Of a DNA stretch of 62,277 nt, positions 19,425 through 53,959 are shown piece by piece (within the stretch, counting starts at the first letter, position 1; each line of letters starts with the position of its first letter). Under the pieces are notes generated by a model. It was given only the letters and a program-made list of their open reading frames with translations, had not been told where the DNA came from and ran no database searches. The stretch is from Diadema antillarum (Eukaryota): contig NW_027271651.1 of assembly GCF_040938485.1 (NCBI RefSeq), forward strand, positions 248,001 to 310,277, read 5' to 3'. A program made the position numbers and the translations under genes.

Positions 19425-20949
19425 NNNNNNNNNNNNNNNNNNNNNNNNNNNNNNNNNNNNNNNNNNNNNNNNNNNNNNNNNNNNNNNNNNNNNNNNNNNN
19501 NNNNNNNNNNNNNNNNNNNNNNNNNNNNNNNNNNNNNNNNNNNNNNNNNNNNNNGTTGTGTAATAAAAGCCACATTTACGTGAGCTAGGCGACGAGTTTG
19601 ATGTATCACGGAAATCAGAGGCATTATTTACCATTTGCAGATGAAACAAAAGCAGAGCTGTATATCACTTCAAAATAGTTCTAAAATTTGAACAACAGTT
19701 ATCAATTTTTTTTCCTACACTAAACCATCTATACAGTTATAGTTTAGTAAGAAAAGTAGTGATATCTCCTAATATTTTAGACTTTATTGCGAAATTTTTA
19801 TATGGTGGTTGCTTTGTAATACAACTTCGCCACCTTTTACCTCTCGTTTTTCTTCGCTCATAACAAAACGGTTTACTTCCTCTAACACTCATTCACATTA
19901 AAGTCAATGAGCTTCCAACGCAGTTAAAAGTGCAGATTCATGCGTAATGGCTTTTCCAAAGCGACTTGAATTGATATGACACATGATGTACACAGGACGG
20001 CAAGTTTTGTATTTTCAATCAACGTCAATTCTTCTGTATCTGTCAAGTTTAACGGAGAATTTCTTTTCAAATTCCGCTGATTTTTCTTCCTATAAGTGTT
20101 CAATACCTCTAGTTGTATGGACTCAATGGTAGTCTTGTTTAATCTCTCTTGCAGATGCAACGTTATCAATTGAGATTCGTTCTGACGTTCCTTGCTGAAG
20201 TTTGCAGTTGGTTTCGTGAGATCTTCATGATACAAAAAGAGGGTTTGTATTCAAATCTCATCTTTGTATAATCTGTGACATATTTCACTTTCCATTCCCT
20301 TTTTCAGTCGTCAAAGAGAAGACACCACAAATAAGAATCCATGCACTGACATAGACTAACCAAGTAAGACGAAAAGTAGGGAAGACGAAATAAGACGAAA
20401 AGTAACACTTGGTAAGTATACGGATTCGTGGAGGAATATCAAGCCACCTACAGTCCGTTGCCCCGTGTATTGTTATCGGTGTAAGCATATTCGCCAAACT
20501 TGATCGTCTTATCTTTCCTTTAAATTTGATCATCGAGATCTAATGGATAAACTGCTGTAGAATATTTTTAACCGCATAATTAAAATATAAGATTAAGTCA
20601 TTTAAAAATCAGTTCGAATGTTTTTACACATGTTTCCTCATTGACACACACACACACACATCTGCGACCTTTGGTTGACCGACTCTTGGTAATTATTACT
20701 ATGAGTACAACTTAAGTAGTATTTTGGTTCACGATTTTCCAAACACCCCCCCCCCCACCTCCCCTCACCCCACCCTCAGTCTTATCCCCTCTCTCGTTTC
20801 CTCACTTTACTGCAAATAGAACTTTAACTCTGACATCTCCGGATTAGGCCTCTTGACATAACTGTATTGTTATTTTCATACTCACTCCCCTACCTCCCCC
20901 CCTCCGCGAGATACAGTATATTCTTACACTACTAGTACACCACGCGTGT

Positions 20950-22442: not shown

Positions 22443-22576
22443 ATGGCTCGGAGTTCTCATGACGCCGTGCTGTTACTGCAACTCCTGTGTTTGATCACCG
22501 GGGGCCTGGCGGCCACGGGGGGTGGTCCACCAGTGGACGACTGGCGGGGCATCTTCTCCAAGTTCATGTGCTCTTA
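22443..22576 (+). CDS. Type I Tyr-motif-rich receptor, coding exon 1 (signal peptide)
   Basis: MARSSHDAVLLLQLLCLITGGLAATGGGPPVDDWRGIFSKFMCS, with a hydrophobic core and small residues at a likely cleavage site. Donor TA|GTAAGT (phase 2). Confidence 0.8.
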
Positions 22577-23610
22577 GTAAGTACCAGTTTCTGTACCAGT
22601 ATAGCGCTTTTCAGCTATTTTTTTTTTCATCGGTGTTATATGCTGCCACTTATTCGTGTGTTGCCAAGTTAGTCTTAATTCACCAAAAGTTATCAGAATT
22701 TGCTATATCTTCGATTTAGATTAATAAAAATGTTCACGTTTCAGAAAGTTGAACAAGTTTCATTCCAGCACAGATACTGAATTCCGTATAAATGCATTAA
22801 AGCTAAGGAAGTCAGGGTTATTAGCAATATGACAACGGGATACCACCGCTGTGGCATTTAACAAGTGACGTCAAGCCAGCACTGTATAAAGGGCATGCGT
22901 TTATCAAGGCAACAAACTATAGACGTGCAACAGCTCAATGACAATAAGATAGCCATAAGCAACCCGCCCGTCCCCATACGAGGGAATACAATATGGCGGA
23001 GGGACTGTTGCTAGGTGAGCTGTACTGTGTTTCCGAGAACACTAGCAGTTTCATACATCATTCGACAAGCACATGACGACCGAGCAAGGTGATCACCTAA
23101 TCCCCGCCCAGATTTGAGGGAAGTGAAAAACTTTAGGTAGCCCCATATACCCAATGTCAGTAGACCTTAATCATAGGACTTTGGGCGAGAGGCCAAGAAA
23201 CTAGCGCGAATTGCTCATCCCTGCATAACGAAGAGCAAAACTGACATTTAGTTGCCTCTGGTTATCCACTAGGGACAACAACAACAACAACAATACAACA
23301 ATAACAGCAGCAAAAAAGACATCAAAATAGAATAGAGAAAATGCTAATAAGAATAATGACGCTAAAATTGCTGCGATTTTGTTGTGTTATGTTTTGTTTT
23401 TGTTTTGTTTTGTGTGTGTCTGTATGTGTTTGTGACTAATTGCACTCCGCTAACGTAATTTTTGGGTTCTTTGCGAGCTTTCCTGTGTGGTTAAGAGAGG
23501 GAAGGATATTTTGTATTAGACCAGCTCCGGGTCTGTGTTGATCGACTGGGAAGTAACGAGAAAAAAAAAGAGGTAAAAATGATGGAGAGATGTAGAAAGG
23601 AGAGAAAAAC

Positions 23611-23641
<31 letters not shown>

Positions 23642-24396
23642 GAAGGAGAAACAGAGAGATAAACGTACATCTGTTTGTTCGTTTTACGCCATCATTAATG
23701 ATAGCGGGATGTAATTTTGAATGTTTTCAGTGCAGGTGAAATAATGGTTCATGACCATTCCTAAATAGGTGTCTTCTCTGCATAGTGCTTCATTGAATAG
23801 ACCATACATAAACACATATTATACCCTTATAATGTACGTCTCATTTTGTCCGTCACAGACAGTCAATGTTGTTAACCAATTTTACTTGAGCTGGAGAAAA
23901 ACCGGGTTATGAGTTCATCTATGATTCATGCCATTTCCCCTTGGCAACGATAAGGGAAGCGGCGGTGGACGCGTGGATCAGTGTCAAAATTGTTGACCAC
24001 ATTACCGATGACTATGATCGCGGTGCGAAGCCGTGGAGCACAAATGCGCAAATTCATTCTAATTCCCCAAATTCAACCCATTCGAATTTTACCAGAGTGC
24101 CTGTTGACCTGTTAATTCGTGTGATACATGCAATATCCCCCTCCCACGCCCACACAAACTGTATCATACTATAGGCATAAACATTGAATATCTATAACTA
24201 TCGCATGTTATGTCTACTTAAGAAAATATGAAATTTATACAATATAGAAATAGATAAATTATGAGATAAAGAGATGGAAATATGAATTAACACGTCTATT
24301 ACATATTTTGTTTGTTTAAAAGGAAGTATGTTGGTTATATAGGCTCTCCCTTCCATTCAGCTACTTACTATGCATTCGGGAAGAGTTCAATGTTAT

Positions 24397-24440
<44 letters not shown>

Positions 24441-26188
24441 TTCTTGGTAGCTTTACATATGTATACGAGTAGATTGTATGCAAAGTGTATACTTTCTTAC
24501 TATGTCACATAAAGCCACAGAACAGTAGATACGTAGTACAAAATGCATGTATGACAAATCATATCAAGTATTAATAAAGACTTATATTTATTTAGTTTTT
24601 AGGAAGGCACGGCAAATGTGTAAGAATATAGCACCAATGATTTTTACAGACTTACTTCTCACAGCACGGGAAAACCTTATTTTACATGACATTGTGTACA
24701 TTCACTGTCAAATCACGAAATGTTATGCAGTTACGTATTGAGTAGTTGTAATTCTAAGATAGAGGCGTTTACACGTTTCATGTTAAGTTTTCACACACAC
24801 ACACATACTTGTGTAACGTACCACAGACCACTATACATGCTATACATCTTGAACAGTTTGAACTGAGAGCATTACATTATTATTTGCATCATGATGTTAG
24901 GGTCCCCCCCCCCCTTTCATATACGAAATATCAACAGATGGCTATCAATTTGCACTTCCAATAAATTATCTGTGATCCGTTGCAATAGATAGATGCAGTG
25001 TGAAATGAGTAATTTCTGTGTAGTTTTCGGGATCTGTCTTGCCTTATTTTGACCGCTTAAAAATCATTGTTCTCATCGTGGAGTCGATTTAGAGAGTTGG
25101 ACTCAAGTTTCATGTCGAGTTCATGACTCAGATAGAATTACTGCAATCAACTCCATAAAAAATAAAAGCAGCCGATTTATAATGAGGGTGCGCAATTCCT
25201 TTAAAGTATTTTTGTTTTCAGGTTCATGAAACCACATCGACAGCTATTTTCTCAGCATTCACACTTAAGACTTTTTTTTTTTGGGGGGGGGGGATTTCCA
25301 GATCTAGAGTCGTTTCCCCTGTCTGGTACGCAATTGAGGCTCAACGGCAGTTAGTCTTCTTCTTCTTCTTCTTCTTTTTCTGTGAAATAAGAGTCTATAA
25401 TGATTATATCTATTGTTTATTGAGAAAAGGTGTACGTGTCCCACTGGATCCTGTGAACAAAAAAAAAAAAAAAAACCCACACAATTCAACGAGTTACTGT
25501 CTTTTCACCACTTAAATGTATGATGACGTGAAAGTGAAGTCATCAGGTTTGGGAATAGCCTGCATTTTGAAACTAGTTTGCATCCAAACCATCGATAAAT
25601 TTGTCTCTTGTGAGAAGAAGAAGAAAGGCTCATGTACATCTCATCATTTTGCTTTGAACGTTGAAGGCTAAAACAATTTCGTAATGATGACTCTGTAAAG
25701 GTTGAATATGGGGGTATAGAGTTACCTCATTATTGACAAAGCGCGGTTTGATATCTTACGTACAAATGAATAGGAGTGTTGTGAGGAAATAACATCACCC
25801 TCTTATCGGACTGCTCATGGTTGTGATTATAGAGTTAATGTTTCGAGGAAATGTGCTGAGCATGTTGAACTTTAAAATTCCCCGACTTTGTCATTTTCCT
25901 TGTCCGATTTGTAAAACAAACAAACAAAAAGACTTACTTCACTTCGATTTCATCATTCAGTGGAGTTTCCCTCCAAAACCATTCCTCCACTAAATACCGT
26001 TTATGCCAATGGGATTGATAAACAAAGCGGGCATCATCCTTGTCACCCACTGATATTCCAAATCCTTTAATATCACTACTGTGTCGTTTTCCTCCTTTGT
26101 CGTTTTCCTGCTAGATTTGCTCTTTTGACCTGTTTCCGAAAACAGAATTAAAATAGCCAAACAGAAGGGAACAGAAAACAGCTTAGCT

Positions 26189-26227
<39 letters not shown>

Positions 26228-27666
26228 TTATTCGATATCGTCACTCATACTTCGGGCTCATGGTACCACCTAATTACTCAATCGAATTACAATATTGACA
26301 AGCGATACGTGAAGGAATTAGAGATGAATAACAGTAGTGGAAAAAGAAAAAGAGGAAAATGCAGACCAGTATGGGCGAGACAGCGGCAGTAATAAATATG
26401 ATCTATAATGCGACCATGCTTCCTTTTGAAAGAAATGTTGTCTCTAAACAGAAATTCAAATATGCAATATGTGCTCCTGTTTAAAAGTGACCAATGGACT
26501 TTGGGGAAGTTTTCATTGCTTGAAAACAGTTCTTTTCAATCTGAGACGAATTAATTGTCGAAGACTTTAAACATTTAGTATATCCAAAAAAAAAAAGAGT
26601 CGAATTGCTAATGCACCCAGGTTAATATAAGGTGAGATTTTCCTGCTTGTTTGAGCACTTTCATACACTATAGCATTGAAATGTCCCAAGCTGTTATCTG
26701 GGACATAAGATTGCACGCTTGACGGAACGGTGTGGCTATGAACTGAAAGGTGGGCCATTGTGACATCGACTGTGATCAACTTCCGGGATGACCCGTGTTG
26801 CGACATCCAGTACCAGCCATGCACAATAAATGGCTTTCTTTCCACCAGAAACCACAAAGGCTACTCCTATAACTGATACTGAGAAAAGGAAGCATATGAT
26901 GATGCATTGAACTTTATATCTATGCACCATGCTGAAGTTGATATTAAAATTGCCGAGGAGCTTTGCCAAGAGGCGATCAAATTTGTTTATAAATTAAAGT
27001 CCGCTAATGGTCGATGTGAGTTTAGGGTAACGTCGCAGTAAATGTTTGATTTGAACTTGATAAATATTCTTGTTGTGAGAATAATGTGATACAATTTATT
27101 GCATATTCTAAAACCATCTATTTAATGTAGTCATGGCATTGGGCGGTTGTTTTATCAAATGGCAGGCGTACTTCTTTTAGATACAACGTCAGCACATGTG
27201 AATTCCAGACGTAGACTGTCAAGAGCTCAGCTATGACGCTTCGTGTGACGTCCCTGTAGTGAGTCACCATGGAAATGAGAAATATGAATATACTTGGCCT
27301 TACTTTGACGAACTGAACTTCAATCTATATACGAACTCTAAGATTAAGCAACACAAAACAGTGTTCAAAGTTTTCGAGTCAAGGCTTACTCCATTCTGAG
27401 AAAATGAAAGCAAAACATCCTCCACATACAATAATATCAATCGCTTTAAGCTGTGTCGAATACATGTTTCCCTATCCACCCTGTGAAAATAGACAGTTGC
27501 TTTAAAAAAAATACTTCAGTGGACATCTCAGGTTTATGATTGCATTGATATAATTATTCTCAAAAGGCAAAGTGTTCTCCAGACAGAAATGATCACCACT
27601 TCTGTTTCATTATACTTTCGAAACATTTACTTCACATTATGTGTTAATAGTATGTAGCAATTAAGT

Positions 27667-28090
27667 GGTTCTTTCCAGGAACAATTAAGTCTTAAAAACA
27701 TTATGCGCTCACCGTGTTGCAAATTTATATCATCAAGATTAATCCTCTTAGGACTATCACCGTAAGATACCATTTACATTCTAGGTAAAATTGATTGTTG
27801 GTTTTACAAATAGGGATAAAAAGAAAAGGGTAGAGTCATAGAGCAACAAATAGGCAAAATATAGTGAGGTATACGTAACGGTTCTTTCCCGAAACAATTT
27901 ATTCTTAAAAACAGTATGCGCTCATTGTGTTGCAAATTTATATCATCAAGATTAATCCTCTTAGGACTATCACCGATCGAAAGATGTCATTTACATTCTA
28001 CGTACATTGGTCATTGATTGTACTAATAGGGTTAAAGGGAAAAGGGTAGAGTTATAGAGCAACAAAAAAGGCAGATATAGTGAGGATATA
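27667..28090. repeat. Diverged tandem duplication, period ~213 bp
   Basis: The copies start GGTTCTTTCC at 27667 and 27880 and share TGTTGCAAATTTATATCATCAAGATTAATCCTCTTAGGACTATCACCG exactly. A (TA)n run follows. Confidence 0.9.
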
Positions 28091-28093
28091 TAA

Positions 28094-28145
<52 letters not shown>

Positions 28146-30856
28146 CGGTCTAACAATTCTTCAAAGACATCAATCCAACATCCGTCTAAATCTGGTTGAA
28201 CTGCAGAACCGACAATAAGGCAAAGCACCTGTCTTCCTTTTTTATTCCTTTTTTTCTCTCTTGTCCCATCTTGTTTCGAGACAGAACAATGACAACAGCG
28301 TCATAAAAGTAACTACTCGCCCACCTATATACCCGCATAATTTTGCAGACTCCGTCGTATTGTTTCTGGACTGGATTGGTATATTCACGGACCCTATACT
28401 CCATGGTTGGCATAATGGGTTGAATTTGGAAGAAATTAGCGCAGTAGCATAACTAAAAATAGACAGAAATGTTGATATACTTCCGTACCTCACGTGGCTG
28501 AAAAAGATAGCCAGTATAAAGTATATGTGAACGCCGTGTAATGCCTTCCGAGTTGATAATGATCTTCGTGTATATGTTATGGTTTTGTTTGGGAGTGTCG
28601 TAATTACTGCGATGTCCGGCGATGACGTCAGTTTACGTGTGCAAAGAGAAACGTTATCTAGAGAACAACAGAAGTCAAGAACGTGAATGAAAGTATCTAA
28701 CAATAAATGTTTGAACTCAGTGTGCGATTTATTCCTCAAGGGCAGACGTCCTCTGTTTAATAAGTCTCGACGACTGAAAGAAAACTACTGTATTAGCATT
28801 TTGACATGGTCAATAAGAGTTCGCTGGTGCTTACAGCTCTCTTTCATTCTGTACTTTAGCAACGAATGATGAGTGTTTCGTTTCTAGAATTTTCTTTTAT
28901 ACGTTGTGGACAAAATATCTCCCAATATACGTAGGCTTCGCACAAGTAATATACTCTTTGATACAATAAAACTTTAAATGCTGCAAAATTATGAATGACG
29001 TTGTCGTAATCATGATGGAAATAATTATGTTCCTTCTTGGCAACAGTGTGTTTTTAAGCACATTAATTTGTAAAGGAATGGGTCGAGGTCTCAAATTTTG
29101 TCACTACAATTTACCAAAGAAAAGGTTGGAATTGTTAATCTGTAGAAGCACGGGATCTTTCTTGGATTTTGGCATAATCTGTAGTGATAGTCTGAGTAGT
29201 GGCACTTCACCCTTCTGAGGTATGACCAATGGTGCAAGAGATTGAAAGCGTCAAGATGAAACATATCTTGTACAACCCTCAGTTCTAATGGTAACCAGAC
29301 GAAAGACACCCAACCCAGTTAGCCACACTTCCAGCAAATATTTATGCGGTGATCTTTCTCTTGACTTAGCACAAGGATATAACTGCTAAGCGAGTTGATG
29401 TATCTCCTATCCCAGTATTCAAGAGGGCATTTTCGGTATAAACGGGACCATTATACCAGGCAATTGATCTGTGGACGTTAACGCCTTTCTTGAAGAACAG
29501 TGTTCATCTGAATTAAATAAGGAGGTTCATCAGTGATATTGTATCAATTATGTCAGCATACAGCGCCATTCCTCATACACTTGTAAAGAGGACCGACTAA
29601 ATTATTGAAACAGAGAATGACAGAAAAAAAATTAGAGATAAGTGACAGAACACATCAATATGATGCTGGTAGTGATTACAGCTTGGTGATGATGTTCAAA
29701 GTAGTCATGTGGTATTGCCAAAGCTGGTGGAACTATTTTCACTATCTCTGGATAAATGATTGTCAAAGATAAGTGCTGTCTATTTCATTTAAATTGTACT
29801 TTGCACGATATATTGATACTCTTTCTATATCCAAAGGAGAATAGAATGCGTAGTAAAATCTGTAACTGTCGTCAATGGAAAAAAATCCCAAGAAAACAAA
29901 TTAAGTGTTTTTAAAGAAAACCAGTGGAACTAAACGATTTGAGGCGTCATGAACCAAGTGGTAAGCTCACCATAAACTAAACAAAGGAAGCAGACAGAAT
30001 CTTAAAGTGGAAGTTTAAAACTGTGCCACCGTGTCAGATCAAGGAAATACAAGTGTCAAAGTCCAGATTCTTTTGGATGACAGTGACACCGAACTTCAAG
30101 GTGTGTTTTGATTTGAAGCAAAAAAAGGAAGCTGTCTCAAATAAGACGCAAAAAACACGACAACACGTTGTCGTGTCTCGCGTCTTCCTTCACGTCCGGC
30201 AAATGCAACACATCCACATTCCGAATTCATATTTCGTGTCAGAGTTGTCAAATCAATAAGGCTGCCTTCCGATGAAATCACGTCAATTCTATGTGTGTGA
30301 TTTTACTTTATTAATTGAAATTTGATGTGACTATCATTATGAAAGAGGAAAAGGATGCGATGATATTCTGATTCATAAATCTGTATAATTGATATTTAAG
30401 ATGACATATAAAAACAAAGCATATTAAATCTGATACTCGGAATGGTGGAAGTTTCATTACATAAACAAATCAACTCAAAATTATAAAGTTATGGAGCTGT
30501 GCTGTTCTCACCAAATGTATCGTAATGACATCAGATAGACCTAAATATTATGCAGCATAATGTTGTAACAACGCCCAATCATTCTACTGAGGGAATGGGA
30601 TACATTTAGATATTGGAATTCTATTGGAAAATCCAGACATTGGCATAAGTTCTACTTATGGAAGTATTACATTCTATTGTTTAAACCAATTGTTGCACGT
30701 AAAATGAAGATTGACCATCATTTCATCATCATCATCATTGGGATTACAACATAAACCACATAATTATGATTGGTCACGGCCAGGAATTACATCTTGTTGT
30801 GTTTTGTTGGTGTTGTTGTTGTTTCTGTTTTAATATATTGTTTTTGTTCATCTCAG

Positions 30857-30975
30857 CATGTCATGCCAAGGATGGTGCGACTGTACGAGAGCCCGCCAAG
30901 GCGGGATTGGAACCGAGATCACGCCATCAGACAATGATAATTGTCCAGCCGGCGATCAAACCGGCAATTTTACGT
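30857..30975 (+). CDS. Receptor coding exon 2 (Cys-rich ectodomain, part 1)
   Basis: Acceptor TCTCAG| and donor T|GTGAGT. 119 nt bridge phase 2 to phase 1: (Y)MSCQGWCDCTRARQGGIGTEITPSDNDNCPAGDQTGNFT(W). The supplied ORF track shows this region in a different frame. Confidence 0.8.
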
Positions 30976-31589
30976 GTGAGTTCCACATCCAACATACTCA
31001 TTTATGACCCTATGACATAGAACTGCTTTGTTATAAAATCTCAGCATTGTTATCTAGCCCAAAATCGTTTTCTGCTTATTTCTGACTGTTGACTGAATAT
31101 TGAGATAGCTAATTATTTTTAATGAATAATAACAAGTTAAGTTCCATGCATCTAAGACCAGAGAGAGTGGTTTCATTGTAACTATTTGCCTGCGGTAAGT
31201 ACTTTTGGCGTTGCAAATGTCCGTTTGATGTCATGTCATGTTGTCAAGTTTTTCAGTCACCTCATATTGCGACGATTTCAGTTCAGATTTTATTATGGAA
31301 GCAACTTTCCCTTGAAAACCTACCGTACAGCACCTGGAAAACCATTTAACCACCTTTGATCCGCCAGCTAGGGCAGTTGCCTAGAGGGTAGACGTCACAC
31401 GAGTTCATTGTCCCAGGCATACCCCGCAGAACCAACGAGGTACTGCTCCTTGGTAGAACATGGTTAAAGGCCCTCTGCAATGCAAATGCATGTAAACTTG
31501 TGCTGGTTTAAAATACAGGCCTATTTACCTTCGTCGTCACGTTTATGGCCAAATGAATATCTCAATACGTGTTATACATTTTATGATTT

Positions 31590-31880
31590 TTCGTCTATAT
31601 TTCTTCATATTACTTCGATCCATCCACAAACCCCCAAATTTCAAAACCAGGATTCTTCAGACGATATCATCTGTCAATCACTGCTAAATTACTGATATGA
31701 TTAATAAGAAACGTCGTATGGAAACTAACAAGTAATGCTCAATCATTCCAATGGCTTTTGGTAATCATGGGAAGTCATTTAGCAGTGATTGACAGATGAT
31801 GTCAATGGCAGAATCTTGGTTTGGAAGGTTTTTCTTTTGTAGATGGATCGAAGCAATTTGAAGAAATATATCAGAAAATC
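31590..31880. repeat. Degenerate long inverted repeat (foldback/MITE relic)
   Basis: Perfect 24-bp arms at 31666-31689 and 31777-31800. Outer arms TTTCTTCA.ATT.CTTCGATCCATC also pair. Confidence 0.75.
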
Positions 31881-32772
31881 TTATGTAAAATATATGGCTT
31901 GTATGGCACATGCTTAGATAGTCTTTCGGTCGTTTAGTGATGATCAGGGTAGATAAACATCAGTAGGGAAGAGAAATAGAAAAATCTTATAAAGTGTGAA
32001 TCTTATATTAGAGTATTCTTTTTGCCAAATAAAGGATAATCATTCAGGGTTCAATTGTATTATAAATATTGACACAAGTCAACATGCATTCACATTGCAA
32101 AGTAAAATGTGAAATATATCAATTTAGATATGATGAAAGATATAGAAAATGAAGGAGGAGCGAATGGGAAAGATGAAAGAGCTGCTGAACAAGAAGATGA
32201 TATATTTAAATGTTTACTTTTAATCACAATATTAGGCTTACTATTATTATGAAATTTAGTCACCCATGCTTTCTGTTTATATCGCAAGATTGCAAGATGT
32301 ATAACGTATACCAATCATCATTAACAAGTTCCTGCATTAACAGTCATAGCGAAAGAGTTTTGTTCGTGGGACTTTTCCTTTGGCATGTTAGGTATATCTT
32401 GCTCTTTATTGTTATATTGCATTCTATGTATGCAACGCTGGTCANNNNNNNNNNNNNNNNNNNNNNNNNNNNNNNNNNNNNNNNNNNNNNNNNNNNNNNN
32501 NNNNNNNNNNNNNNNNNNNNNNNNNNNNNNNNNNNNNNNNNNNNNNNNNNNNNNNNNNNNNNNNNNNNNNNNNNNNNNNNNNNNNNNNNNACTCTTTATG
32601 GCTACCCTGCTGACGGGACCCTGTATACGACAGTCTGAAGAGATTCAGAAAGGTATAAACTAAAGTACCATATCATCATTTGTTGTTGCTAAGTCTGAAG
32701 AGATTGAGAAAGGTATAAGCTAACGTATTATATCATTATTGGTTGTTGCTCTTGTTGTTGTTGTTTTTTCAG

Positions 32773-33028
32773 GGTTCAGTGATTGTGGAAATGTGCAAAC
32801 AGAGGGGAAAATATGCTACAGGTGGCGGCCGAGAACACCGGATCGGATATCCTACGTCCAGTGCGTAGCAAGAGAGGACGTCATGGTGTGTCTAATGAGG
32901 GAAGTGATGGACGGCGGTGCCGTGAGGTGGCGTGCCTCACTCACTGGCGAGGACAGGATCGACGTCGATGAGCTCTGCACCGGCGCCACCGGGGCACCTA
33001 CACTAGACAGCTGCAGCCTGTGCGACGG
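32773..33028 (+). CDS. Receptor coding exon 3 (Cys-rich ectodomain, part 2)
   Basis: Acceptor TTTTTCAG|GG and donor GG|GTAAGG. 256 nt, phase 1 to 2: FSDCGNVQTEGKICYRW...YVQCVAREDVMVCLM...DELCTGATGAPTLDSCSLCD. Confidence 0.85.
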
Positions 33029-33543
33029 GTAAGGATAATGGTTATAGAATTACAAATAATCATATCAAAATGATAATGATGATGATGGTGGTGATAGTGA
33101 TGATGATGATGATGATGAACGATGATGATGATGATGATATTGTTTGAATGATAACGAAGGATAATGATAGCTACAATAGTAATTACAGCAATAGTATAAT
33201 AATGAAAGCCACTTGAACTAAGCCATTGTTTTCCAGAAGGCCCTGCGTCATAGTAAGGATACCCAATCGGCTGCGAAATCGGATGGGGGTATGGGGTAGG
33301 GGAGGGGGCTGCAGCCGCACCCCTTTTTCCAGTACACCCTCACTCACGCGCGTGCACACACAAACACACAAAGACACATACACACATACACACATACACA
33401 CACTCTCTCGTATGTGTGTTTGCGTTTATATGTTGTGTGTAGTTGTCAATGCACATATTCGTACAGAAACACAACTATAATGTCTACGTTTATGAAGTAC
33501 TCTTCACAATAATTATAGTGGCCAACATCTCCATTCTCACCAG

Positions 33544-33716
33544 ATACGTCGAACCAAGCACACCGACTCCACCACCACTACGTCCACCGAGCAACCAAGG
33601 CGGAACGGAGGGGGAGGGAGACACCGACCCCACGTTTATCGCAGTGACGGGTTCGAGCAGCGTCCCTGGTGGAACATACAACTTTTCGGCTGACCCGGAC
33701 GGGGAGACTATCCCTG
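33544..33716 (+). CDS. Receptor coding exon 4 (Pro/Thr/Ser/Gly-rich stalk)
   Basis: Acceptor CTCACCAG|A and donor G|GTGAGT. 173 nt, phase 2 to 1: YVEPSTPTPPPLRPPSNQGG...YNFSADPDGETIP. Confidence 0.85.
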
Positions 33717-35332
33717 GTGAGTTATCTTGGCATGCACGTGATTAATGCTTCTTTCTTTCTTTCTTTCCCACGATACCGTATTATCCTTTTAGTGGACAAT
33801 ATCATATCAATCTACGTGCGAGATGAATTATGGCAGATCAAGTTTAGACATGCCAGACAGAATTGTACCCCGTGTGGTAGTCAGTTATTGTAGTGTGTGT
33901 TTTCTGCTATACACGGATATAGGAAATGCGGTCGACATTATTTCATCTGCTATTGTCTGAGAGGTGGCGTCTAGAACGGCTTCCGTCATATATTCCCGTT
34001 TACAGAAGTTACTTGTAATGGTCATTTCTTGAAACATCTTTGAACGTCATTTCCCTGAAACATGATCGGAAAATGCTGAGCTCGGAGATTCCCAGAAAAG
34101 GTCACTCTCATGACTGTTATGTCGAACGGGAGAGTGACTGCATCGTTTACTTCGTAGGCATGGGCGACGAAGGTCCATGTTAGCCCAAGGTGTAGTTTTG
34201 CAAAATCATGATCTAATCGACACTTCCATTTCTTCCTAAGAGGTAAACCAGAGTAACAGGGTTTGGGATAAGGAAAATGAAAGCAGACGATCGTATACTT
34301 TCCTGGCCGTGTCCAAGGTGAACAGAAACCCAAAGCACACGGCGGTCCAGACAAGGTTGTGGATTTCCTTCCTTCAAACATAGAAATCCTTGAAAGTGTC
34401 AGTATTGCATTATTCAATTGCAAAAACATCTGCCCTTCTAATTACATATCAATATAAAAATAAACATATATACATAAGATTACATACGAATGTAATATAT
34501 ATCATATACATATATATATATGTTTATGTATAAATATATATACATATGTACATACATACATACATGCATACATAAAAAATAGTAATGAATGTTTGTGTGT
34601 GTTTGTCCAGAGTGAATGAGAACGAGAGAGGCTAAAAACCCAGACCGCTTTGAATGTCTTGTCTTGTATAGACTAAGCCGCGTTTGTATAAGCTAGTTCG
34701 TACTTGACCGATACCATTTGCATGCAACTTAAGACTCGCCATCTTGAACTCATTGGTGGCGTGCAAACCTCTTCCATCAACGCTGATACTAACTGCAATT
34801 GCCTCATGAGTTCATTTACACGTCATTGTGGGAAGGGGGCTCTACCACTACCTTGGAAAAGATAGAAGGCAATGCTGCCTAAAATAGCTTTACAATGCGG
34901 TTAAACTTAGTCATGTAGATTCGCCGACCCACACGTGTTTTGCTACTGCTTCCAATATTCTTGTTATTTTTGCTAGAGCACTAACATGCTTAGCACTGTA
35001 AATGTCAACGTAAAATATGTCACATACTTCTGCAAAAGTTAACTTGCCCTTTTTTCGCTTTGTGGTTTAAAGTTTTGATACTCATACTTGCGCTATTACC
35101 AGTCGTGCCGTGTGAAATGAGGTTAACAAAAACTCCTATCCGGTTCTTGAAGGTGATATGGTAGATTTTAAACGGAATGTAATCCCTTGTGCGTGTCTCG
35201 AGAAAGCATATCATATTTTGGTCTATTTTGTGATTACCACACAAAGTAATACTCTCGATATTTTCCATTTTTGCTTAATTCAATTCCAATGTACTTTACT
35301 TGAATGTGTCTGTATGTCTCTTTTAAACACAG

Positions 35333-35474
35333 GCAATCTGAGAACAATAATAATCGTCGCTTTCTCAGTGGTCGGAGGCCTGGTGATCATCCTCGTGTTC
35401 GTCATATTTTGTCTGGTCTGCTACATCCGTAGGAAAATCAATGGACGAGTTCGAGACAACGATTCTTCCGTCAG
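35333..35474 (+). CDS. Receptor coding exon 5 (single TM helix)
   Basis: Acceptor ACACAG|GC and donor AG|GTAATG. 142 nt, phase 1 to 2: TIIIVAFSVVGGLVIILVFVIFCLVCYI followed by the positive-inside stop-transfer RRK. Confidence 0.9.
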
Positions 35475-37757
35475 GTAATGTATACTGCCGAGGCGCTTTG
35501 GCAACACATTCTTTAATATTCCCTGTTTAAAGCCCTCTCCCCCCATTTGTCCCACCCCCTCTTTCTCTTAACGTATCCTTTAAATGTAAGGGCAAAATGT
35601 GTGTTAAGCTGCTTTAGTCTGCTGAGGAAAGGCTTCACGTAAGAAAATTGTTTGTTTAAATGACTATTTCTACAGCGACGGGGGTTTTGCAGTTGCTGGA
35701 ATACAAAAAGTTCAGTTATCGCAACAACAACAAAAAAGTGTGGACGGAAAAAGCGTTATATCATGGCACGCTGTGTATAGTGCTTCCATTATGTTTACCA
35801 AATTCATAGCTCTTTGAAAAATATGGGATACTGCCTTTCAAGTCTGCAAGTTGTATATAATTTGGCAGACAAAAGGAATAATCATTCGTCCTAGAATCCC
35901 TACAGACAATCCACTTCAGATGTCTCCGGGTTCAAAATAATTCTGTGCAAGTATGTACTTGAAGAGCTTGAAGAGCAAGAAATTATCAAGCAGATGAAGG
36001 ATGGGGAACTTTGGGCTTTGGGATTTGCTGCAGCTTTTTCTACTTCGTCTACGGACAACTGGTTATGATGACGATGATGTACAGACAGTGATCGTAATGA
36101 GGAAATCACATACATTTTATTGCTTAACGAAATACATTGTTCTGTCGTATTCCTCTTCTCTTGAATATCGAATTACATTTTATTACATTGTTTACAATTT
36201 TGAGGATTGTTGCTCTTTTCTTCTCAAGGAAATCAGTAGAGACCTTTTTAATGTGTTCCAAGGACATCCAAGTTCACTCAATCTCTTTGACATTGGTTAA
36301 TGTTATAGCGACGTTTGGACTGTCTTTTTTTTTTTTGATTTTAGTTGGATTTGGTTTTTTTTAGCTTGTATGCAGAACGTGTGATATCCTGTGCATGCTC
36401 TGGTTCAATCATAGTGCATTCATCACTGTATGTGTGTATGTTGGTTTGCTGTTGATGGTGGTGGTGGTGTTAGTGTCAGTGATTGGAAAGGCATGAACAA
36501 AAGTGTGTGTGTGTGTGGGGGGGGGGTCACATTACTAGGGTCATAGTTTGACTTGACGTTTCTTGTTTCTGAATTTTTAACATTATGTTAGGGACCATGC
36601 GATTGAATACGAAGTAGCCTCCAGAGATAGATTTCTTCTCTCATGGAAATTGGTATACAGAATGGCCATCGGCCGCTTCGATATTTAGTCTCAAAGCTGG
36701 GGGAAAAACAACCTGAATGCACAGGAAGTTACTGGAATAAACAAGATAAAAAGGGAAAGTACTCTTGGCTATAGCCCAACTGTGTTTTACGAATTCTGAC
36801 GATATGTTTAAAAATAGCATGATATATCAGTGTTTATCGTGCGACTCGTCCTTTTTAGTTTATGATACGTGACTATATAGCACTGCGTGGATCTTGTTTC
36901 CGTTCATTATTCGTTCCTTCTCTGTAGTATATCCAAGGAGAATCTGTTCCACCTCCATGGTATATCGATGCCTGGATGCTTTATGTAAATGGCAACTCGG
37001 TTTCGTATATTCTGCCAGTACTTTGCTCCTTTTCTTCTCTATTCTGCTTTGTTTGTGTACCATTGTACTCTAACACACAATCATCTTGTATCCATATTCT
37101 AAGTTGTGAGTTTACTTTGGAGCCTTTTCCTAACAAGCCTATATTCTTGATTGGTCCCCCACAATGAATATTATTATGACTTTAAACTGTTATCATGGTA
37201 ATGATTGCCCTTTTTCTATGGAAATAACTGAAATGAAATGAAATGCTTACAATCAGTCTACCTATAAAGATGAAGGATTTTATCCCTGTTGGAATAATCA
37301 TTGCAGGTTGTATAGTGGGTATAATGGTGTACAGAATTATATGTCAGATGTACGAAAACACGGCTAAGAAAACTGGATCTAGGAATGGAGCGGCGTGGAG
37401 AAAACGCAGTGACCAGACATCAATGGATGTACTGGCATTTGCAGTGTAAACTTTGTATAAAGAAGAATATAGGAAATACTCAACATAACAAACTCTTGAC
37501 TTTAATTCAAATAGAGCTAATTCCTTTTGGTTTTTAGCTGTTTGGGGTTAATGATATTATGACGGTAGCTGATATATAAACACCTTTTTCGGTCTAACGG
37601 ATCTGCTGATGCCAAGATTTAATCTGTTCCACGTGTTTCAAATTTGCCCTATCAATTTGGACGTTATCTGGGCCGCTATCCCCTTGATACGTCATGTTAA
37701 CACCTCGGAATTTCCTTGGTTGTTTTTCGTTTGATTTTGCTTGTTTGTGTATTTGTT

Positions 37758-37809
<52 letters not shown>

Positions 37810-38084
37810 TTTGTTTTCTCACCTGGTCATGGCATGAAAGCTACAATTACCCAGAAGAGAATATGAGCAACTGGGTGGATGTCAAGGGCAGCTCATGCGT
37901 GGCACACGGTTATAGAGATATAAAATTGATACTCAAGATGGTCCCATAGGCAGGAGAGGTTGTGGGTTGCTCTTTTTTTTCACCCCTTTAAGTGACATAT
38001 CGCTTCCCTCGTGGCTTGCCACTTCCTGTGTAGATTGATAACATGCCCCTTAACACACCCAACGTCAATTTTCCCCCCATGCAG

Positions 38085-38173
38085 GGCGCACTACCGCTCA
38101 GGAGAAGTCAATCGGTACAGTGCGGTGCAGAATTCGCTGAGCACGAACAGAGCGAGTGTGGAGTCACGACCCG
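38085..38173 (+). CDS. Receptor coding exon 6 (juxtamembrane cytoplasmic)
   Basis: Acceptor CCCCATGCAG|G and donor G|GTAAGT. 89 nt, phase 2 to 1: AHYRSGEVNRYSAVQNSLSTNRASVESRP. Confidence 0.85.
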
Positions 38174-38612
38174 GTAAGTTTATATTCAGCCGTCCAATAG
38201 TCAGTTCGTAGTCGGCGCATATGCCGATTGCTTCACGTACACTTCTCTTGAAGAGGAGAAGTAATCATATCATCCGTGTTAACTAAGTTTGTACGTTCGG
38301 GACACCAGCGATATTTTCCCAATTATAGAAAAATGTACCGACTTTCCATTTCTAGTATCCAATGCAAATCTTAAGTATGACATTAAATGTAGCAATTAGA
38401 CATGCCTCGGTCCTGTAAACGCATTATGAATTAACGCTGTTATCATCCCAAGTGATCGAGGGAAAAATACCAGTGGAAGGAAAATGGACAAGAACTCATG
38501 CTTACTCACAAGAGTAACCAGTATTTACCATAAGAGCCGAGGTTCATTCATGCCCCAAGTCTGTTGCAGTTTCCATCATTTTTACAGCCTAGGCCCTAAT
38601 ATAATATCTTAA

Positions 38613-39001
38613 AGGGATGATGGTACAGTATTGGTGGAACTGAGAATCGGGCTTTTAACTTTTTGTGAGATACCAAGAAAACACTTATGATATAGTACAG
38701 AGCATACCATTTTAAGAGGAATTCAAAGTTTATTTGATGAAAATCGGGTTTGAAATGACTGAAACATCCAAAAACAAAATAAAACAAAGCGGTCGTACGT
38801 AATAAAGTGTGGGTCCCACACTTTATTAGAATCGCTCTTTTTTGGATATCTCAGCCATTTCAAAACCAATTTTCATCAAATAAACATTGAATTCCTCATA
38901 GAATTACATGTTCCTTCATATTTCATAAGAGTTTTCTCAATATCTCACCAAAAAATGTTAGAAACCTGAAATTAGGTCTCAACCAAAACTGTACGATCCC
39001 T
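38613..39001. mobile_element. Kolobok-like foldback MITE with TTAA TSD
   Basis: TTAA(38609-12)-AGGGAT...ATCCCT-TTAA(39002-05). Perfect central palindrome TAATAAAGTGTGGG-T-CCCACACTTTATTA at 38800-38828. Confidence 0.85.
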
Positions 39002-39068
39002 TTAAGGCGTATGGACAAGCTACAAATCATTGAGAATCCCTGTCTTGTCTTTGTTATCTTCTTTGCAG

Positions 39069-40684
39069 TGTTCAGCATATCTCCTCAGACTTCGATTGAG
39101 TCCGGCAGCCCTTCGACCAACAGGAAGTCCATGAAGAGCAAGAAGTCCCTGGCGTCTTCGACATGGTCAAGGAATCCCAGAAAGAGTTCCACTTTGACAG
39201 CATGCAATGGAGCGCCATACACCGAATACTATCCGGACCGAGGCGGCCCCAGCTACGCCGGTCTACAAACTGTAGTTAGCGACTCTGCCCTGGTCGGCAT
39301 GGCTCCATTCAGCATACTATCTGAATATCAGGAACCAGAAGTCGTGTTGCCTAAATCGTCGAATCCTCCACTCTTCGAGAGCTTCGGCTTAACGGCCTCA
39401 AGTTCCTCTCATTCATTCAAGCCTCCGGAATATGCTGAGCCCGAAGAAACAGTCAGAGGAGCTTCAACGCCCGTTTCCTACGATAGTTCTGGCGGTAGCG
39501 GTAAGAGCAAAAGGAATGAATCTTCGCGGGCTAGCGGGGAGATAACGCCAGACTCAGGAGTTGCCAAACACTTCAAACAAAAGTGCGAGGACACTACCAC
39601 GTCACCAACATCATCGATGTGGCGAGGACTGATGAAAGGGAAACAAAAGAAAGGTCCTTCGGCTTCTTGCAAGGTTACCTCTTCAGCCAGTCCCGACGGT
39701 CAAGTGGTGACACCGGGTAAAGAAGGTATTCTCTACCACGAACTTGTGCAAACCCTCAACAAGAAAAAGAAGAAACCTCTCACTGAAACAAACTCCACTC
39801 CGCCGTTAGAAACGGACGCTGAGAACCCTTACGCTGAAGTTGGGGAGGTTTCTTTTGAAAGTAGTTGTGACTTCACCACGGCAACCCGTCCGCGCAGCCA
39901 CAGTCAACCCATGGTGTCAACTTTATCAGGCTATCGGACCTACGAGGAAATTAAGCCATACTCTGTGAACAGCAAGGACAAATCAAAGCATTCCCACGAT
40001 GCAAACACGGCCACACATGAGAACCATCAATACTCTGTTCTCGAGGAATCAAAGGAAACGCCTTCAACACAGTACTTCGTGCTTGAAAATCCCGCCGACG
40101 ATATGGCGGCTCCTCAGTATTTTCAGCTTGAAAAACCTAACAGCTTACCGCTGAACAAGAAAAATACACCCAAGCGCACATTGGACACGGAAAAAATGCT
40201 ATACTCCGACCAGCATATGGACAAGACTGCTACAATCTACAAGAACGATACGTGTGCAGTAAAAGTGCCTGGGAGCAAGAATAAGACCTCCGACCGATGT
40301 ATCGACAGTGACAACGGACTTCCCCGCCAGTTACCCGTGTATTTCCAGTTGGAGCGATCACGTGAGCGAGCCAGCTTAGGATCCACGATCCAGGAATATA
40401 TGAGTTCCTCCGAAAACGTCTTCGCCAACGACGGGAATAGACTTCCAGAAGGGACGCTGACCTACTTTCCTGGTGGCAGGAAGAGGTCGTCGACCTACAG
40501 CCTCGAGGAGCAGGCCTACGACAAGCTGAACCGGAGTGCGAGGAGCAGTCGCAGGAGCAGCGGCAACCAGCTAGGGGCACCTCCTTCTACTGTGGATGGG
40601 GCCTACGCCATGCTCTCTCCCAGCGAGGAAACCAGCGTGCCGGTGAAGGGTGGGTCCCGCAGAAGCAAGAGTTTAAGGAAGTGA
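39069..40684 (+). CDS. Receptor coding exon 7 (long Ser-rich disordered tail with 23 Tyr)
   Basis: Acceptor CTTTGCAG|TG (phase 1) and a 1616-nt open frame to TGA. The spliced CDS totals 2529 nt = 842 aa. The ORF-track start at 39011 lies in the intron. Confidence 0.9.
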
Positions 40685-53172: not shown

Positions 53173-53959
53173 TGAACAATTGTTGATGCAGATGAGGCAA
53201 GTCACATTTGAGATTTGAGACTGCAGTTACCAATGCATACATGTACATGTGGTAAAGTGTGACTCTTTGTGAATACATGAGCCTTCCCAGTGCCCAGGCA
53301 TTTAGCTTAATTTGACCAGCTTTTTCATCAGTATTCAGTATTGGCAATCCATTAGAACTTGACCTACCTCACTGTAGATTAGAAAGCCCACTCAGGTGTA
53401 TCAAAGCACCTCCGATCAGTCAACAGGGAGGCCATGGTGACACAAAAGGGATTAGGGGGATTAGGTAATCTCTGTTCATTGACAATTGCTTTTCAGACCA
53501 ACGGCGTAAATCCGTACTGAGGAGTGGGGGGGATGATCGCCGATAGTCAGGTCACCATCACCACTATTACAAGCCCAACTGGACCNNNNNNNNNNNNNNN
53601 NNNNNNNNNNNNNNNNNNNNNNNNNNNNNNNNNNNNNNNNNNNNNNNNNNNNNNNNNNNNNNNNNNNNNNNNNNNNNNNNNNNNNNNNNNNNNNNNNNNN
53701 NNNNNNNNNNNNNNNNNNNNNNNNNNNNNNNNNNNNNNNNNNNNNNNNNNTCAAGACATAAGGGGGCACCTCGTGGAATAGTAATTTTCAGGGTGTGTAT
53801 GCTTATGCGTGCTTGCGTGTGTATGTGTGTGTGCGCGTGTGTGCGTGCGCTGTCAGTCTACAAACTTAATCAATACATAACGATATGTCATACATTCCAC
53901 AGCGCAGTCATTGAGCAACATTGTAAGTTTTTTAGAATGACGGTGGGAAACAACAAATT

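What the first reader, a model, noticed from the sequence alone, without database searches (positions are those of the whole stretch)
22443..40684. Complete hidden 7-exon gene for an unrecognised single-pass receptor with a very Tyr-motif-rich tail
Seen: seven exons (134, 119, 256, 173, 142, 89 and 1616 nt) with GT-AG sites whose phases chain 2-1-2-1-2-1 with no stop, giving 842 aa. The order is signal peptide, 12-Cys ectodomain, P/T/S stalk, one TM with RRK, then a ~585-aa S/T/K/E-rich tail with 25 Tyr and no catalytic motif. Eleven Tyr are YxxL/I/V (YSAV, YAGL, YHEL, YAEV, YEEI, YSVL, YFVL, YFQL twice, YDKL, YAML), and ILYHEL fits the ITIM consensus. Established: non-catalytic tyrosine-phosphorylated receptors signal through such motifs by recruiting SH2 proteins (Syk/ZAP70, SHP-1/2, SHIP), and an ENPY motif occurs in MEGF10-type engulfment receptor tails. 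Inference: this is an uncharacterised invertebrate immune or recognition receptor acting as a large SH2-docking scaffold.
Basis: partly seen in the sequence, partly recalled or inferred. Interest (0 to 1): 0.82.

Follow-up and report, generated by a model that had tools for sequence, protein, structure and literature searches.

The report
Sea-urchin membrane protein with tyrosine-rich tail
The seven-exon gene is real and conserved in sea urchins, where databases already list it as an uncharacterised protein; its long floppy tail keeps its tyrosine docking motifs unusually well, so it probably works as a phosphotyrosine signalling scaffold, but an immune role is untested.

Summary
The window is Diadema antillarum (sea urchin). 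The seven exons, GT-AG sites, phases 2-1-2-1-2-1 and the 842-aa product all reproduce.

The S. purpuratus ortholog (LOC100892916, 819 aa) has seven coding exons with the same phase chain. The N run at 32445-32590 lies inside intron 2, so no reading frame crosses it. Lytechinus and Strongylocentrotus proteins align across exons 2 and 3 with nothing missing.

The gene is only partly "hidden". RefSeq lists it as "uncharacterized protein" in five urchin species.

No Pfam or PDB match was found. Exhaustive HMMER found relatives only in echinoids.

- **Conservation:** the tail is predicted disordered, yet it is better conserved than the ectodomain (49% against 29%).
- **Tyrosines:** Tyr is the most conserved tail residue (16 of 23 invariant in four lineages), and the +3 position after it is invariant at 14 of 16.
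- **Not supported:** the ITIM is not conserved, there is no NPxY, and no data bear on an immune role.
- **RNA:** reads tested no junction.

Best reading: an echinoid-restricted, non-catalytic, tyrosine-phosphorylated docking receptor. This function is inferred, not shown.

The parts
22443..22576 (+). Exon 1: start codon, signal peptide (hydrophobic core aa 6-27) and the first Cys of the ectodomain
   Evidence: good start context, upstream in-frame stop. tblastn with L. pictus P0002 hits 22467-22571 at E=0.001. Hydropathy.
30857..30975 (+). Exon 2: start of the Cys-rich domain (C-x3-C-x-C with WCDC)
   Evidence: The WCDC block is shared with Lytechinus and Strongylocentrotus. The D. setosum homolog is 91% identical against 85% in the flanks, keeps AG/GT, and carries a 3-nt in-frame deletion.
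32445..32590 (.). N run inside intron 2; not coding in this model
   Evidence: Orthologs align across exons 2-3 without missing residues.
32773..33028 (+). Exon 3: main part of the Cys-rich ectodomain. The RefSeq Diadema model starts at Met122 inside it.
   Evidence: (E=0.003).
33544..33716 (+). Exon 4: Pro/Thr/Ser-rich stalk with one N-glycosylation sequon (NFS)
   Evidence: Identical in RefSeq model P0001. 90% identical in D. setosum.
35333..35474 (+). Exon 5: transmembrane helix (aa ~233-257), juxtamembrane Cys pair (C254, C257) and YIRRK
   Evidence: The AF2 helix has pLDDT above 90. tblastn E=0.002.
38085..38173 (+). Exon 6: juxtamembrane tail with the conserved Tyr motif YSAV (YSTI in camarodont urchins)
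39069..40684 (+). Exon 7: 538 aa of predicted-disordered tail with 23 Tyr, then the stop codon
   Evidence: 48% identity to orthologs; pLDDT below 50. Run X1 has an exact contig at 39107-39495.
39821..39841 (+). ENPYAEV, invariant in all orthologs (pY-A-x-V, a Csk-SH2-type context; not NPxY)
39887..39958 (+). R-x-R-S-H-S-Q-P (14-3-3 mode-1 and basophilic-kinase pattern), followed by GYRTYEEIKP (YEEI, the optimal Src-family SH2 motif). Both are invariant.
40031..40129 (+). Three tandem Y-[FS]-x-L-E motifs spaced 10 and 11 residues apart (6-11 in orthologs); an ITAM-like pattern
   Evidence: ITAM pattern as defined in PMC6219719.
40229..40249 (+). ATIYKND: conserved Y-x-N (Grb2-SH2-type context)
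39323..39442 (+). Two conserved Y-x-x-P motifs: EYQEP, and PEYAEP (GEYIDP in camarodonts); a Crk/Nck/Abl-SH2-type context
40451..40552 (+). Most conserved C-terminal block: GTLT-[YF][FY]-PGGRKR..STYSLEEQAYDKLNRSARSSR
40946..40966 (+). ATTAAA at 40946. A contig of run X1 ends 20 nt later, so this is the likely end of the 3'UTR.
   Evidence: This is an inference.

Best explanation
This is the Diadema antillarum ortholog of an echinoid-restricted gene (S. purpuratus LOC100892916). It encodes a type I membrane glycoprotein.

Its parts, from outside to inside, are:
- a fast-evolving 12-Cys domain of unknown fold, about 145 aa;
- a mucin-like Pro/Thr/Ser stalk;
- one transmembrane helix with juxtamembrane cysteines;
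- a disordered cytoplasmic tail of about 585 aa with no enzymatic domain.

The tail most likely works as a multi-site phosphotyrosine docking scaffold, that is, a non-catalytic tyrosine-phosphorylated receptor. The proposed sequence of events is as follows. Ligand binding or clustering of the ectodomain lets Src-family kinases phosphorylate the conserved tyrosines. YEEI then holds the Src-family SH2 domain. Y-x-N, Y-x-x-P, the tandem YFxL pairs and Y-[AS]-x-[VI] recruit Grb2-, Crk/Nck-, Syk/SHP- and Csk-type SH2 proteins respectively. The invariant RSHSQP adds a Ser-phosphorylation-dependent 14-3-3 site.

Shown here: gene structure, orthology, predicted topology, predicted disorder, and motif conservation. 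Inferred only: phosphorylation, the identity of the partners, the ligand and the tissue.
For: **Gene**
- The exons and phases reproduce.
- The S. purpuratus ortholog has seven coding exons (143/128/247/149/139/77/1577) with the identical phase chain.
- Orthologs at 45-50% identity exist in Lytechinus, Strongylocentrotus and one unnamed ENA assembly.
- Exon 2 is conserved with splice sites and frame intact in D. setosum.

**No catalytic or known domain**
- Pfam and PDB are negative.

**Disorder**
- AF2 with the ortholog alignment gives pLDDT below 50 over nearly the whole tail, but above 90 for the TM helix.
- 76% of tail residues are disorder-promoting.

**Constraint on Tyr motifs**
- Tail identity between Diadema and S. 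purpuratus is 49%, against 29% for the Cys-rich domain.
- Tyr is the most conserved tail residue: 15 of 23 invariant against 32.5% overall, Fisher p=0.001.
- In four lineages, 16 of 23 Tyr are invariant, and the +3 position after them is invariant in 14 of 16, against 33% background.
- Invariant columns cluster within -3..+4 of these Tyr: 52% against 26%, p=2e-6.
- YxxL/I/V is enriched (p about 1e-4) and acidic residues are enriched near Tyr (p=0.02).
- The conserved contexts match known SH2 classes, and two have Pro at +3, which does not fit a YxxΦ sorting signal.
Against: - No phosphorylation, expression or binding data exist.
- No junction-spanning RNA was seen.
- Assigning motifs to SH2 classes rests on general consensus knowledge. 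Short motifs also arise by chance.
- Y and +3 conservation also fits YxxΦ endocytic signals for the motifs that end in L/I/V.
- The AF2 and ESM models rest on very shallow alignments, so low confidence is weak proof of disorder.
- Only about four independent lineages are available, so the conservation statistics have limited depth.
- RefSeq pipelines repeatedly produced the short form in Diadema and L. pictus. An internal promoter cannot be excluded.
Confidence: 0.55

Rival explanations
1. The conserved Tyr motifs are mainly YxxΦ sorting signals. The protein would then be a constitutively recycling or lysosome-targeted membrane glycoprotein (a cargo or adhesion/mucin-type protein), not a signalling scaffold.
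For: Many motifs are Y-x-x-L/I/V with an invariant +3. This is exactly what the AP-2 mu2 subunit reads (established knowledge). The protein also has a stalked, glycosylated ectodomain.
Against: Sorting needs one or two motifs, not 16 invariant Tyr. Several conserved contexts are not YxxΦ: YQEP, Y[AI][ED]P, Y[KQ]N and GPYTEYY. Acidic residues are enriched around Tyr, and an exact YEEI points to kinase and SH2 recognition.
Confidence: 0.15
2. The tail is a Ser/Thr-phosphorylated cytoskeletal or junctional linker, or a condensate-forming region. Its aromatic residues would act as "stickers", without phosphotyrosine signalling.
For: The tail is 16% Ser with a net charge of +15 and polybasic runs. 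It has invariant basophilic-kinase and 14-3-3 patterns (RxRSHSQP, RKRSST). It is predicted disordered.
Against: Phe is much less conserved than Tyr (5 of 13 against 15 of 23). Tyr-to-Phe exchange is rare, which argues for the hydroxyl group and not mere aromaticity. The strong +1/+3 conservation is typical of SH2 ligands.
Confidence: 0.12
3. In Diadema the real product is the short RefSeq form (720-726 aa) made from a promoter in intron 2, and exons 1-2 are not part of the Diadema transcript.
For: Three Diadema RefSeq models and one L. pictus model all start at the first Met in exon 3. No reads here span exons 1-2-3.
Against: The short form begins in the middle of the Cys-rich domain and has no signal peptide. 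Its start simply follows the first in-frame ATG, even when a polymorphism moves that ATG, as in P0009. This is typical of 5'-incomplete models. Exons 1 and 2 have intact ORFs, correct phases and good splice sites, and they match the full-length 819-aa orthologs. Exon 2 is under constraint in D. setosum.
Confidence: 0.1
4. The model is a chance chain of open exons and not a gene.
For: None beyond the absence of junction reads.
Against: Orthologs exist, the exon-intron structure is conserved, and RefSeq models are identical from exon 3 onward.
Confidence: 0.01

Closest known systems
S. purpuratus LOC100892916 (XP_030827928.1), L. variegatus LOC121410817, L. pictus LOC129257095, D. setosum XP_072174060.1, D. 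antillarum XP_071505355.1. All are RefSeq "uncharacterized protein".
   Same: These are true orthologs or the same gene. They share the seven coding exons, the phases, the architecture and the tail motifs.
   Different: The Diadema RefSeq models lack exons 1-2 and the first 121 aa. The ectodomain is only 27-29% identical between Diadema and camarodont urchins, and some Cys positions have moved.
Draper / CED-1 / MEGF10 engulfment receptors
   Same: Single-pass and non-catalytic, with a tail holding many Tyr, including a pattern that fits YxxI/L-x6-12-YxxI/L.
   Different: No EMI or EGF repeats (Pfam negative). No NPxY. No sequence similarity.
Transmembrane adaptor proteins (PAG/Cbp, LAT, LIME, SIT, SCIMP)
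   Same: A disordered tail that is a string of SH2-docking Tyr motifs, including Csk-type (Y-[AS]-x-[VI]) and Src-type (YEEI) contexts, plus cysteines at the cytoplasmic end of the TM helix.
   Different: Those proteins have almost no ectodomain, whereas this one has about 205 extracellular residues with a 12-Cys domain. There are no hits to their Pfam families. They are vertebrate families.
Ig-superfamily ITIM/ITAM immunoreceptors (for example SIRPα, PECAM-1, PZR)
   Same: The concept is the same: an ectodomain plus a Tyr-motif tail that recruits SH2 phosphatases or kinases.
   Different: No Ig domain. The single ITIM-like motif is not conserved.
MYCT1 (Pfam PF15179)
   Same: A weak sub-threshold match over the TM and juxtamembrane stretch (23.3 bits in D. 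setosum, 15.3 in L. pictus).
   Different: The scores are below the curated cut-off of 31.1 bits. The match covers a hydrophobic and Ser-rich stretch only and is probably compositional.

Membership tests
Echinoid LOC100892916 orthogroup (uncharacterised) | Significant full-length similarity to the orthologs | tested here: met
   E-values from 1e-92 to 1e-139, at 45-50% identity over the tail. The N-terminal exons align in order.
Echinoid LOC100892916 orthogroup (uncharacterised) | Same exon number and intron phases | tested here: met
   Seven coding exons with phases 2-1-2-1-2-1 in both S. purpuratus and the window.
CED-1/Draper/MEGF10 | EMI domain and EGF-like repeats in the ectodomain | tested here: not met
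   No Pfam hit in any exon or ortholog.
CED-1/Draper/MEGF10 | NPxY motif in the tail (binds CED-6/GULP) | tested here: not met
   There is no NP.Y in any of the five orthologs, only N-P-Y.
CED-1/Draper/MEGF10 | ITAM pattern YxxI/L-x6-12-YxxI/L (definition in PMC6219719) | tested here: met
   Tandem YFxL pairs spaced 6-11 residues apart occur in all orthologs. This is a pattern match only.
Transmembrane adaptor proteins (PAG, LAT, LIME, SIT, SCIMP) | Very short extracellular part | tested here: not met
   About 205 extracellular residues lie between the signal peptide and the TM helix.
Transmembrane adaptor proteins (PAG, LAT, LIME, SIT, SCIMP) | Juxtamembrane Cys pair for palmitoylation | tested here: inconclusive
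   Diadema has C-x-x-C (C254, C257) and camarodonts have CC at the cytoplasmic end of the TM helix. Acylation cannot be tested here.
Transmembrane adaptor proteins (PAG, LAT, LIME, SIT, SCIMP) | Sequence match to the family models | tested here: not met
   No Pfam PAG, LIME1, SIT or SCIMP hit for the target.
ITIM-bearing immunoreceptors | Conserved [SIVL]xYxx[LIV] motif and an Ig-type ectodomain | tested here: not met
   ILYHEL occurs only in Diadema, and the Tyr is Phe in three camarodont species. There is no Ig domain.
Non-catalytic tyrosine-phosphorylated receptors (a functional class) | Surface receptor without an enzymatic domain, with conserved tail Tyr | tested here: met
   Pfam is negative. 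Tyr is the most conserved tail residue, with an invariant +3 position.
Non-catalytic tyrosine-phosphorylated receptors (a functional class) | Tail actually phosphorylated by Src-family kinases and bound by SH2 proteins | not testable with these tools
   This needs phosphoproteomics or pull-downs.
MYCT1 (PF15179) | Score above Pfam's gathering cut-off | tested here: not met
   23.3, 15.3 and 10.8 bits against a cut-off of 31.1.

The most novel reading that the evidence does not exclude
This echinoid-only receptor could be the missing membrane-proximal docking site of a Src-family-kinase pathway in urchins. One example is the egg-surface scaffold upstream of SFK and PLCγ in the fertilisation Ca2+ rise, whose components are still incompletely known (PMC11593052). 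Another is a coelomocyte recognition receptor.

Its fast-evolving Cys-rich head would act as the recognition part. A single tail would combine Src-SH2 (YEEI), Csk-type, Grb2-type and Crk/Nck-type sites with ITAM-like pairs and a 14-3-3 site.
Probability: 0.05. Interest if true: 0.85.

Novelty: new variant of a known kind. Interest (0 to 1): 0.45.

Why it matters
If the reading holds, sea urchins carry a lineage-restricted receptor with a new type of ectodomain. Its tail would combine, in one chain, docking logic that vertebrates spread over several adaptor families.

The tail is better conserved than the folded-looking ectodomain, and conservation peaks at Tyr, +1 and +3. That pattern marks a concrete set of about 16 residues to mutate.

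In practical terms, the Diadema RefSeq models are missing the signal peptide and the first 121 residues, and the coordinates given here correct that. D. antillarum is a conservation-priority species with recent mass mortalities, so candidate surface receptors are of some applied interest. No immune link is shown.

Tried and rejected
1. **Known domains.** Pfam on every exon and on four orthologs, and PDB sequence searches of the ectodomain, gave nothing above threshold.
2. **Distant relatives.** Two word-indexed searches, one profile search and one exhaustive phmmer search over 1.84 billion representatives found only echinoid orthologs. The only other hits were compositional matches to fungal stalk-plus-TM proteins.
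3. **ESM Atlas.** Feature searches all scored 0.81 or less for the target, which is noise level. There was no usable structure.
4. **AlphaFold.** The L. pictus ectodomain folded without an alignment gave pLDDT 47, too poor for a fold search, so none was run.
5. **RNA support.** Only one small run was offered. It covers part of exon 7 and the 3'UTR and no junction.
6. **Neighbouring Tyr-rich tail exon as a paralog.** Homology to the target is not significant (E=0.06).
7. **A Diadema counterpart of S. purpuratus P0006 just downstream.** The weak hit at 41281-41340 lies in a frame full of stops.
8. **Literature.** No paper mentions the LOC or XP identifiers. No paper linking ENPY with MEGF10 was listed.
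9. **Alignment A2.** The short exon fragments aligned badly, so it was not used further.


Full report
**1. Source and observation**

The window is from the sea urchin Diadema antillarum. The translation of the last exon is 100% identical to RefSeq XP_071505355.1.

The joined CDS is 2529 nt and gives 842 aa plus a stop. All acceptors have pyrimidine tracts ending in CAG, and all donors are GTAAG, GTGAG or GTAAT. The ATG has A at -3 and G at +4, and an in-frame stop lies 28 codons upstream.

- 12 Cys in the mature ectodomain;
- two N-glycosylation sequons;
- 25 Tyr in a 583-aa tail;
- eleven YxxL/I/V motifs and one ITIM-like ILYHEL.

**2. The N run**

The N run at 32445-32590 lies in intron 2. 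It is 1469 nt downstream of the exon 2 donor and 182 nt upstream of the exon 3 acceptor, so no frame crosses it.

An unbiased tblastn of the full-length Lytechinus pictus ortholog against the window hits exons 1, 2, 3, 5 and 7 in order on the + strand. The query residues between the exon 2 and exon 3 hits are accounted for by the rest of exon 2. In S. purpuratus the homologous exons 2 and 3 are adjacent in the mRNA. No coding exon therefore needs to hide in the N run.

I did not look up the missing letters, and physical continuity was not tested with reads.

**3. Is it a gene?**

Yes.
- Orthologs exist in L. pictus, L. variegatus, S. purpuratus, D. setosum and one unnamed ENA assembly.
- I mapped S. 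purpuratus XP_030827928.1 (819 aa) exactly onto its locus L002. It has seven coding exons of 143/128/247/149/139/77/1577 nt with phases 2-1-2-1-2-1, the same chain as the Diadema model.
- In D. setosum (locus L001), exons 2-7 are 88-95% identical. Exon 2 is 91% identical against 85% for its flanks. It keeps both splice sites, and its only indel is 3 nt, which is in frame, whereas the flanking intron has indels of 2, 3 and 4 nt. Exon 1 lies beyond the fetched flank.

**4. "Hidden"?**

Only partly.

All three Diadema models (721, 726 and 720 aa) and one L. pictus model (721 aa) begin at the first in-frame Met of exon 3. In the second D. antillarum haplotype, a polymorphism moves that start a few codons upstream. 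This behaviour is typical of 5'-incomplete models. These forms would lack a signal peptide and would begin inside the Cys-rich domain.

The 819-aa models of S. purpuratus, L. variegatus and L. pictus contain homologs of exons 1 and 2.

**5. RNA evidence**

Only one small run (X1, 41 million letters, Logan contigs) was offered. On 35100-41000 it gives an exact 389-nt contig inside exon 7 (39107-39495) and a contig at 40801-40966. The second contig ends 20 nt after an ATTAAA at 40946. The unique intron sequence has no coverage.

That is compatible with RNA and with a 3'UTR of about 280 nt, but no junction was tested. A high-copy repeat at about 38640-39006 in intron 6 draws very deep coverage.

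**6. Anatomy**

| Residues | Feature | Evidence |
|---|---|---|
| 6-27 | Signal-peptide core | Hydropathy, |
| ~28-170 | Cys-rich region, predicted mostly β |; partly confident |
| 171-232 | Pro/Thr/Ser stalk | |
| ~233-257 | TM helix, pLDDT above 90, then YIRRK | |
| 260-842 | Cytoplasmic tail | |

Cysteines sit at the cytoplasmic end of the TM helix (C-x-x-C in Diadema, CC in camarodonts). The tail is 16% Ser and 76% disorder-promoting residues, with a net charge of +15. AF2 with the ortholog alignment gives pLDDT below 50 for nearly all of it. The ESM Atlas model of the L. pictus protein has pLDDT 0.35. The alignments are shallow, so this is supportive but not conclusive.

**7. Known families**

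There is none.
- Pfam is negative for every exon and ortholog.
- The best hit is a sub-threshold MYCT1 match on the TM and juxtamembrane stretch: 23.3 bits against a cut-off of 31.1.
- PDB sequence searches are negative.
- An exhaustive phmmer search of 1.84 billion representatives and a profile search find only echinoid orthologs.
- The gene is echinoid-restricted, or too diverged elsewhere to be recognised.

**8. Conservation pattern**

This is the key result.

| Region | Diadema vs S. purpuratus | S. purpuratus vs L. variegatus |
|---|---|---|
| Cys-rich domain | 29% | 64% |
| Stalk | 26% | 58.5% |
| Tail | 49% | 78% |

A predicted-disordered tail that is better conserved than a disulfide-rich ectodomain points to dense linear-motif constraint.

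- In the tail, Tyr is the most conserved residue: 15 of 23 invariant against 32.5% of all columns (Fisher p=0.001). Phe is invariant at 5 of 13.
- With four independent lineages, 16 of 23 Tyr are invariant.
- After these Tyr, position +3 is invariant in 14 of 16 and +1 in 10 of 16.
- Invariant columns are twice as dense within -3..+4 of these Tyr as elsewhere: 52% against 26%, p=2e-6.
- YxxL/I/V is enriched over composition (p about 1e-4), and acidic residues are enriched next to Tyr (p=0.02).

**9. Which motifs are conserved**

- GPY[TA]EYY
- SYAGLQ
- EYQEP, and Y-[AI]-[EDQ]-P (two Y-x-x-P)
- ENPYAEV
- RxRSHSQP
- GYRTYEEIKP
- Two or three tandem Y-F-x-L-E motifs spaced 6-11 residues apart
- ATIY[KQ]ND (Y-x-N)
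- YF[QE]L[ED]
- EYM
- The long C-terminal block ending in QAYD[KH]LNRSARSSR
- A C-terminal Y-x-x-[IL]

By established SH2 and PTB specificity (my knowledge, not tested here):
- YEEI is the optimal Src-family SH2 ligand.
- Y-x-N is Grb2-type.
- Y-x-x-P is Crk/Nck/Abl-type.
- Y-[AS]-x-[VI] is Csk-type.
- RSxSxP is the mode-1 14-3-3 motif.
- The tandem YFxL pairs fit the broad ITAM pattern used for Draper (YxxI/L-x6-12-YxxI/L; PMC6219719).

- ILYHEL has Phe in place of Tyr in three camarodont species.
- ENPY is N-P-Y, and no NPxY exists in any ortholog.

**10. Mechanism**

The best-supported reading is a non-catalytic, tyrosine-phosphorylated docking receptor. A variable Cys-rich head on a mucin-like stalk senses a ligand or is clustered. 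Src-family kinases then phosphorylate the tail. The tail assembles several SH2 adaptors and enzymes, and a Ser-phosphorylation and 14-3-3 switch is added.

Gene, topology and constraint are shown. Phosphorylation, partners, ligand and tissue are inferred.

The main rival is that the YxxΦ-like motifs act in sorting. It explains the +3 conservation, but not the number of Tyr, the Pro at +3, or the Y-x-N context.

An immune role is untested. The faster-evolving ectodomain, with shifting Cys positions, is compatible with a recognition function, but equally with relaxed constraint.

A speculative link is to the Src-family kinase and PLCγ pathway of echinoderm egg activation, whose membrane-proximal components are still incompletely known (PMC11593052).

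**11. Verdict**

- The gene is already in databases as an uncharacterised protein.
- It belongs to no characterised family. Functionally, it looks like a new, echinoid-restricted variant of the known class of Tyr-motif docking receptors.

Noticed in passing
window 2787-3605 (+): This is the last coding exon of an upstream neighbour gene. It is an open stretch of about 270 aa, acidic, with no Pfam hit, and dense in Tyr motifs (ENPYQI, VYAGV, LLYYEL, EYLEF, EYGKL, EYGHL, EYGQL, VYGSL). It is not significantly similar to the target tail (E=0.06). A weak syntenic hit (E=1e-6) lies about 8.5 kb upstream of the S. purpuratus ortholog (L002:1383-1598). Atlas features weakly resemble transmembrane adaptors (SCIMP, PAG, SIT, LIME), at scores of 0.72 or less for the named ones. 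So two adjacent genes have Tyr-motif tails.
   Followed up: partly
S. purpuratus protein P0006 (XP_011668078.1, LOC105440052); the stalk matches L002:16850-16990: This 171-aa model has a first ~45 aa nearly identical to the stalk exon of the S. purpuratus ortholog. It then continues into a different TM helix (a weak CD3-zeta TM hit, below cut-off) and a short tail. The tail has a canonically spaced ITAM pattern (YTSL-x8-YEDI) plus VEYENL and VYESPI. The rest of the model is not within 10 kb of the ortholog. It could be a paralog sharing a duplicated stalk exon, or a chimeric old model.
   Followed up: partly
window 59445-59840 (-); D. setosum L001:28285-30502 (-): The downstream neighbour on the opposite strand is a TRPM2-like ion channel in D. 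setosum (Pfam TRPM2, Ion_trans on the called gene). The window ORF with TM-like sequence is probably one of its exons, although Pfam gave no hit on that ORF alone.
   Followed up: partly
window 38640-39006 (intron 6): This is a high-copy repeat. Contigs of run X1 pile up here to a word depth of about 1300, with many variants and loose ends, while the unique intron sequence has zero coverage.
   Followed up: no
window 1947-2729 (-): A 260-aa ORF lies on the minus strand inside the neighbour's last intron. By eye it resembles the C-terminal part of a non-LTR retrotransposon ORF2, but Pfam gave no hit at E<=0.01, so this is unverified.
   Followed up: partly
window 5573-5709, 19425-19554, 32445-32590, 53586-53750: There are four N runs of 130-165 letters at roughly 14-kb to 21-kb spacing. 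Only the third lies inside the gene, in intron 2.
   Followed up: no
RefSeq models P0001, P0009, P0010, P0012: NCBI models of this gene in D. antillarum (both haplotypes), D. setosum and the newer L. pictus release all start at the first Met of exon 3. They lack the signal peptide. This is a recurring 5' truncation and is worth flagging to annotators.
   Followed up: yes
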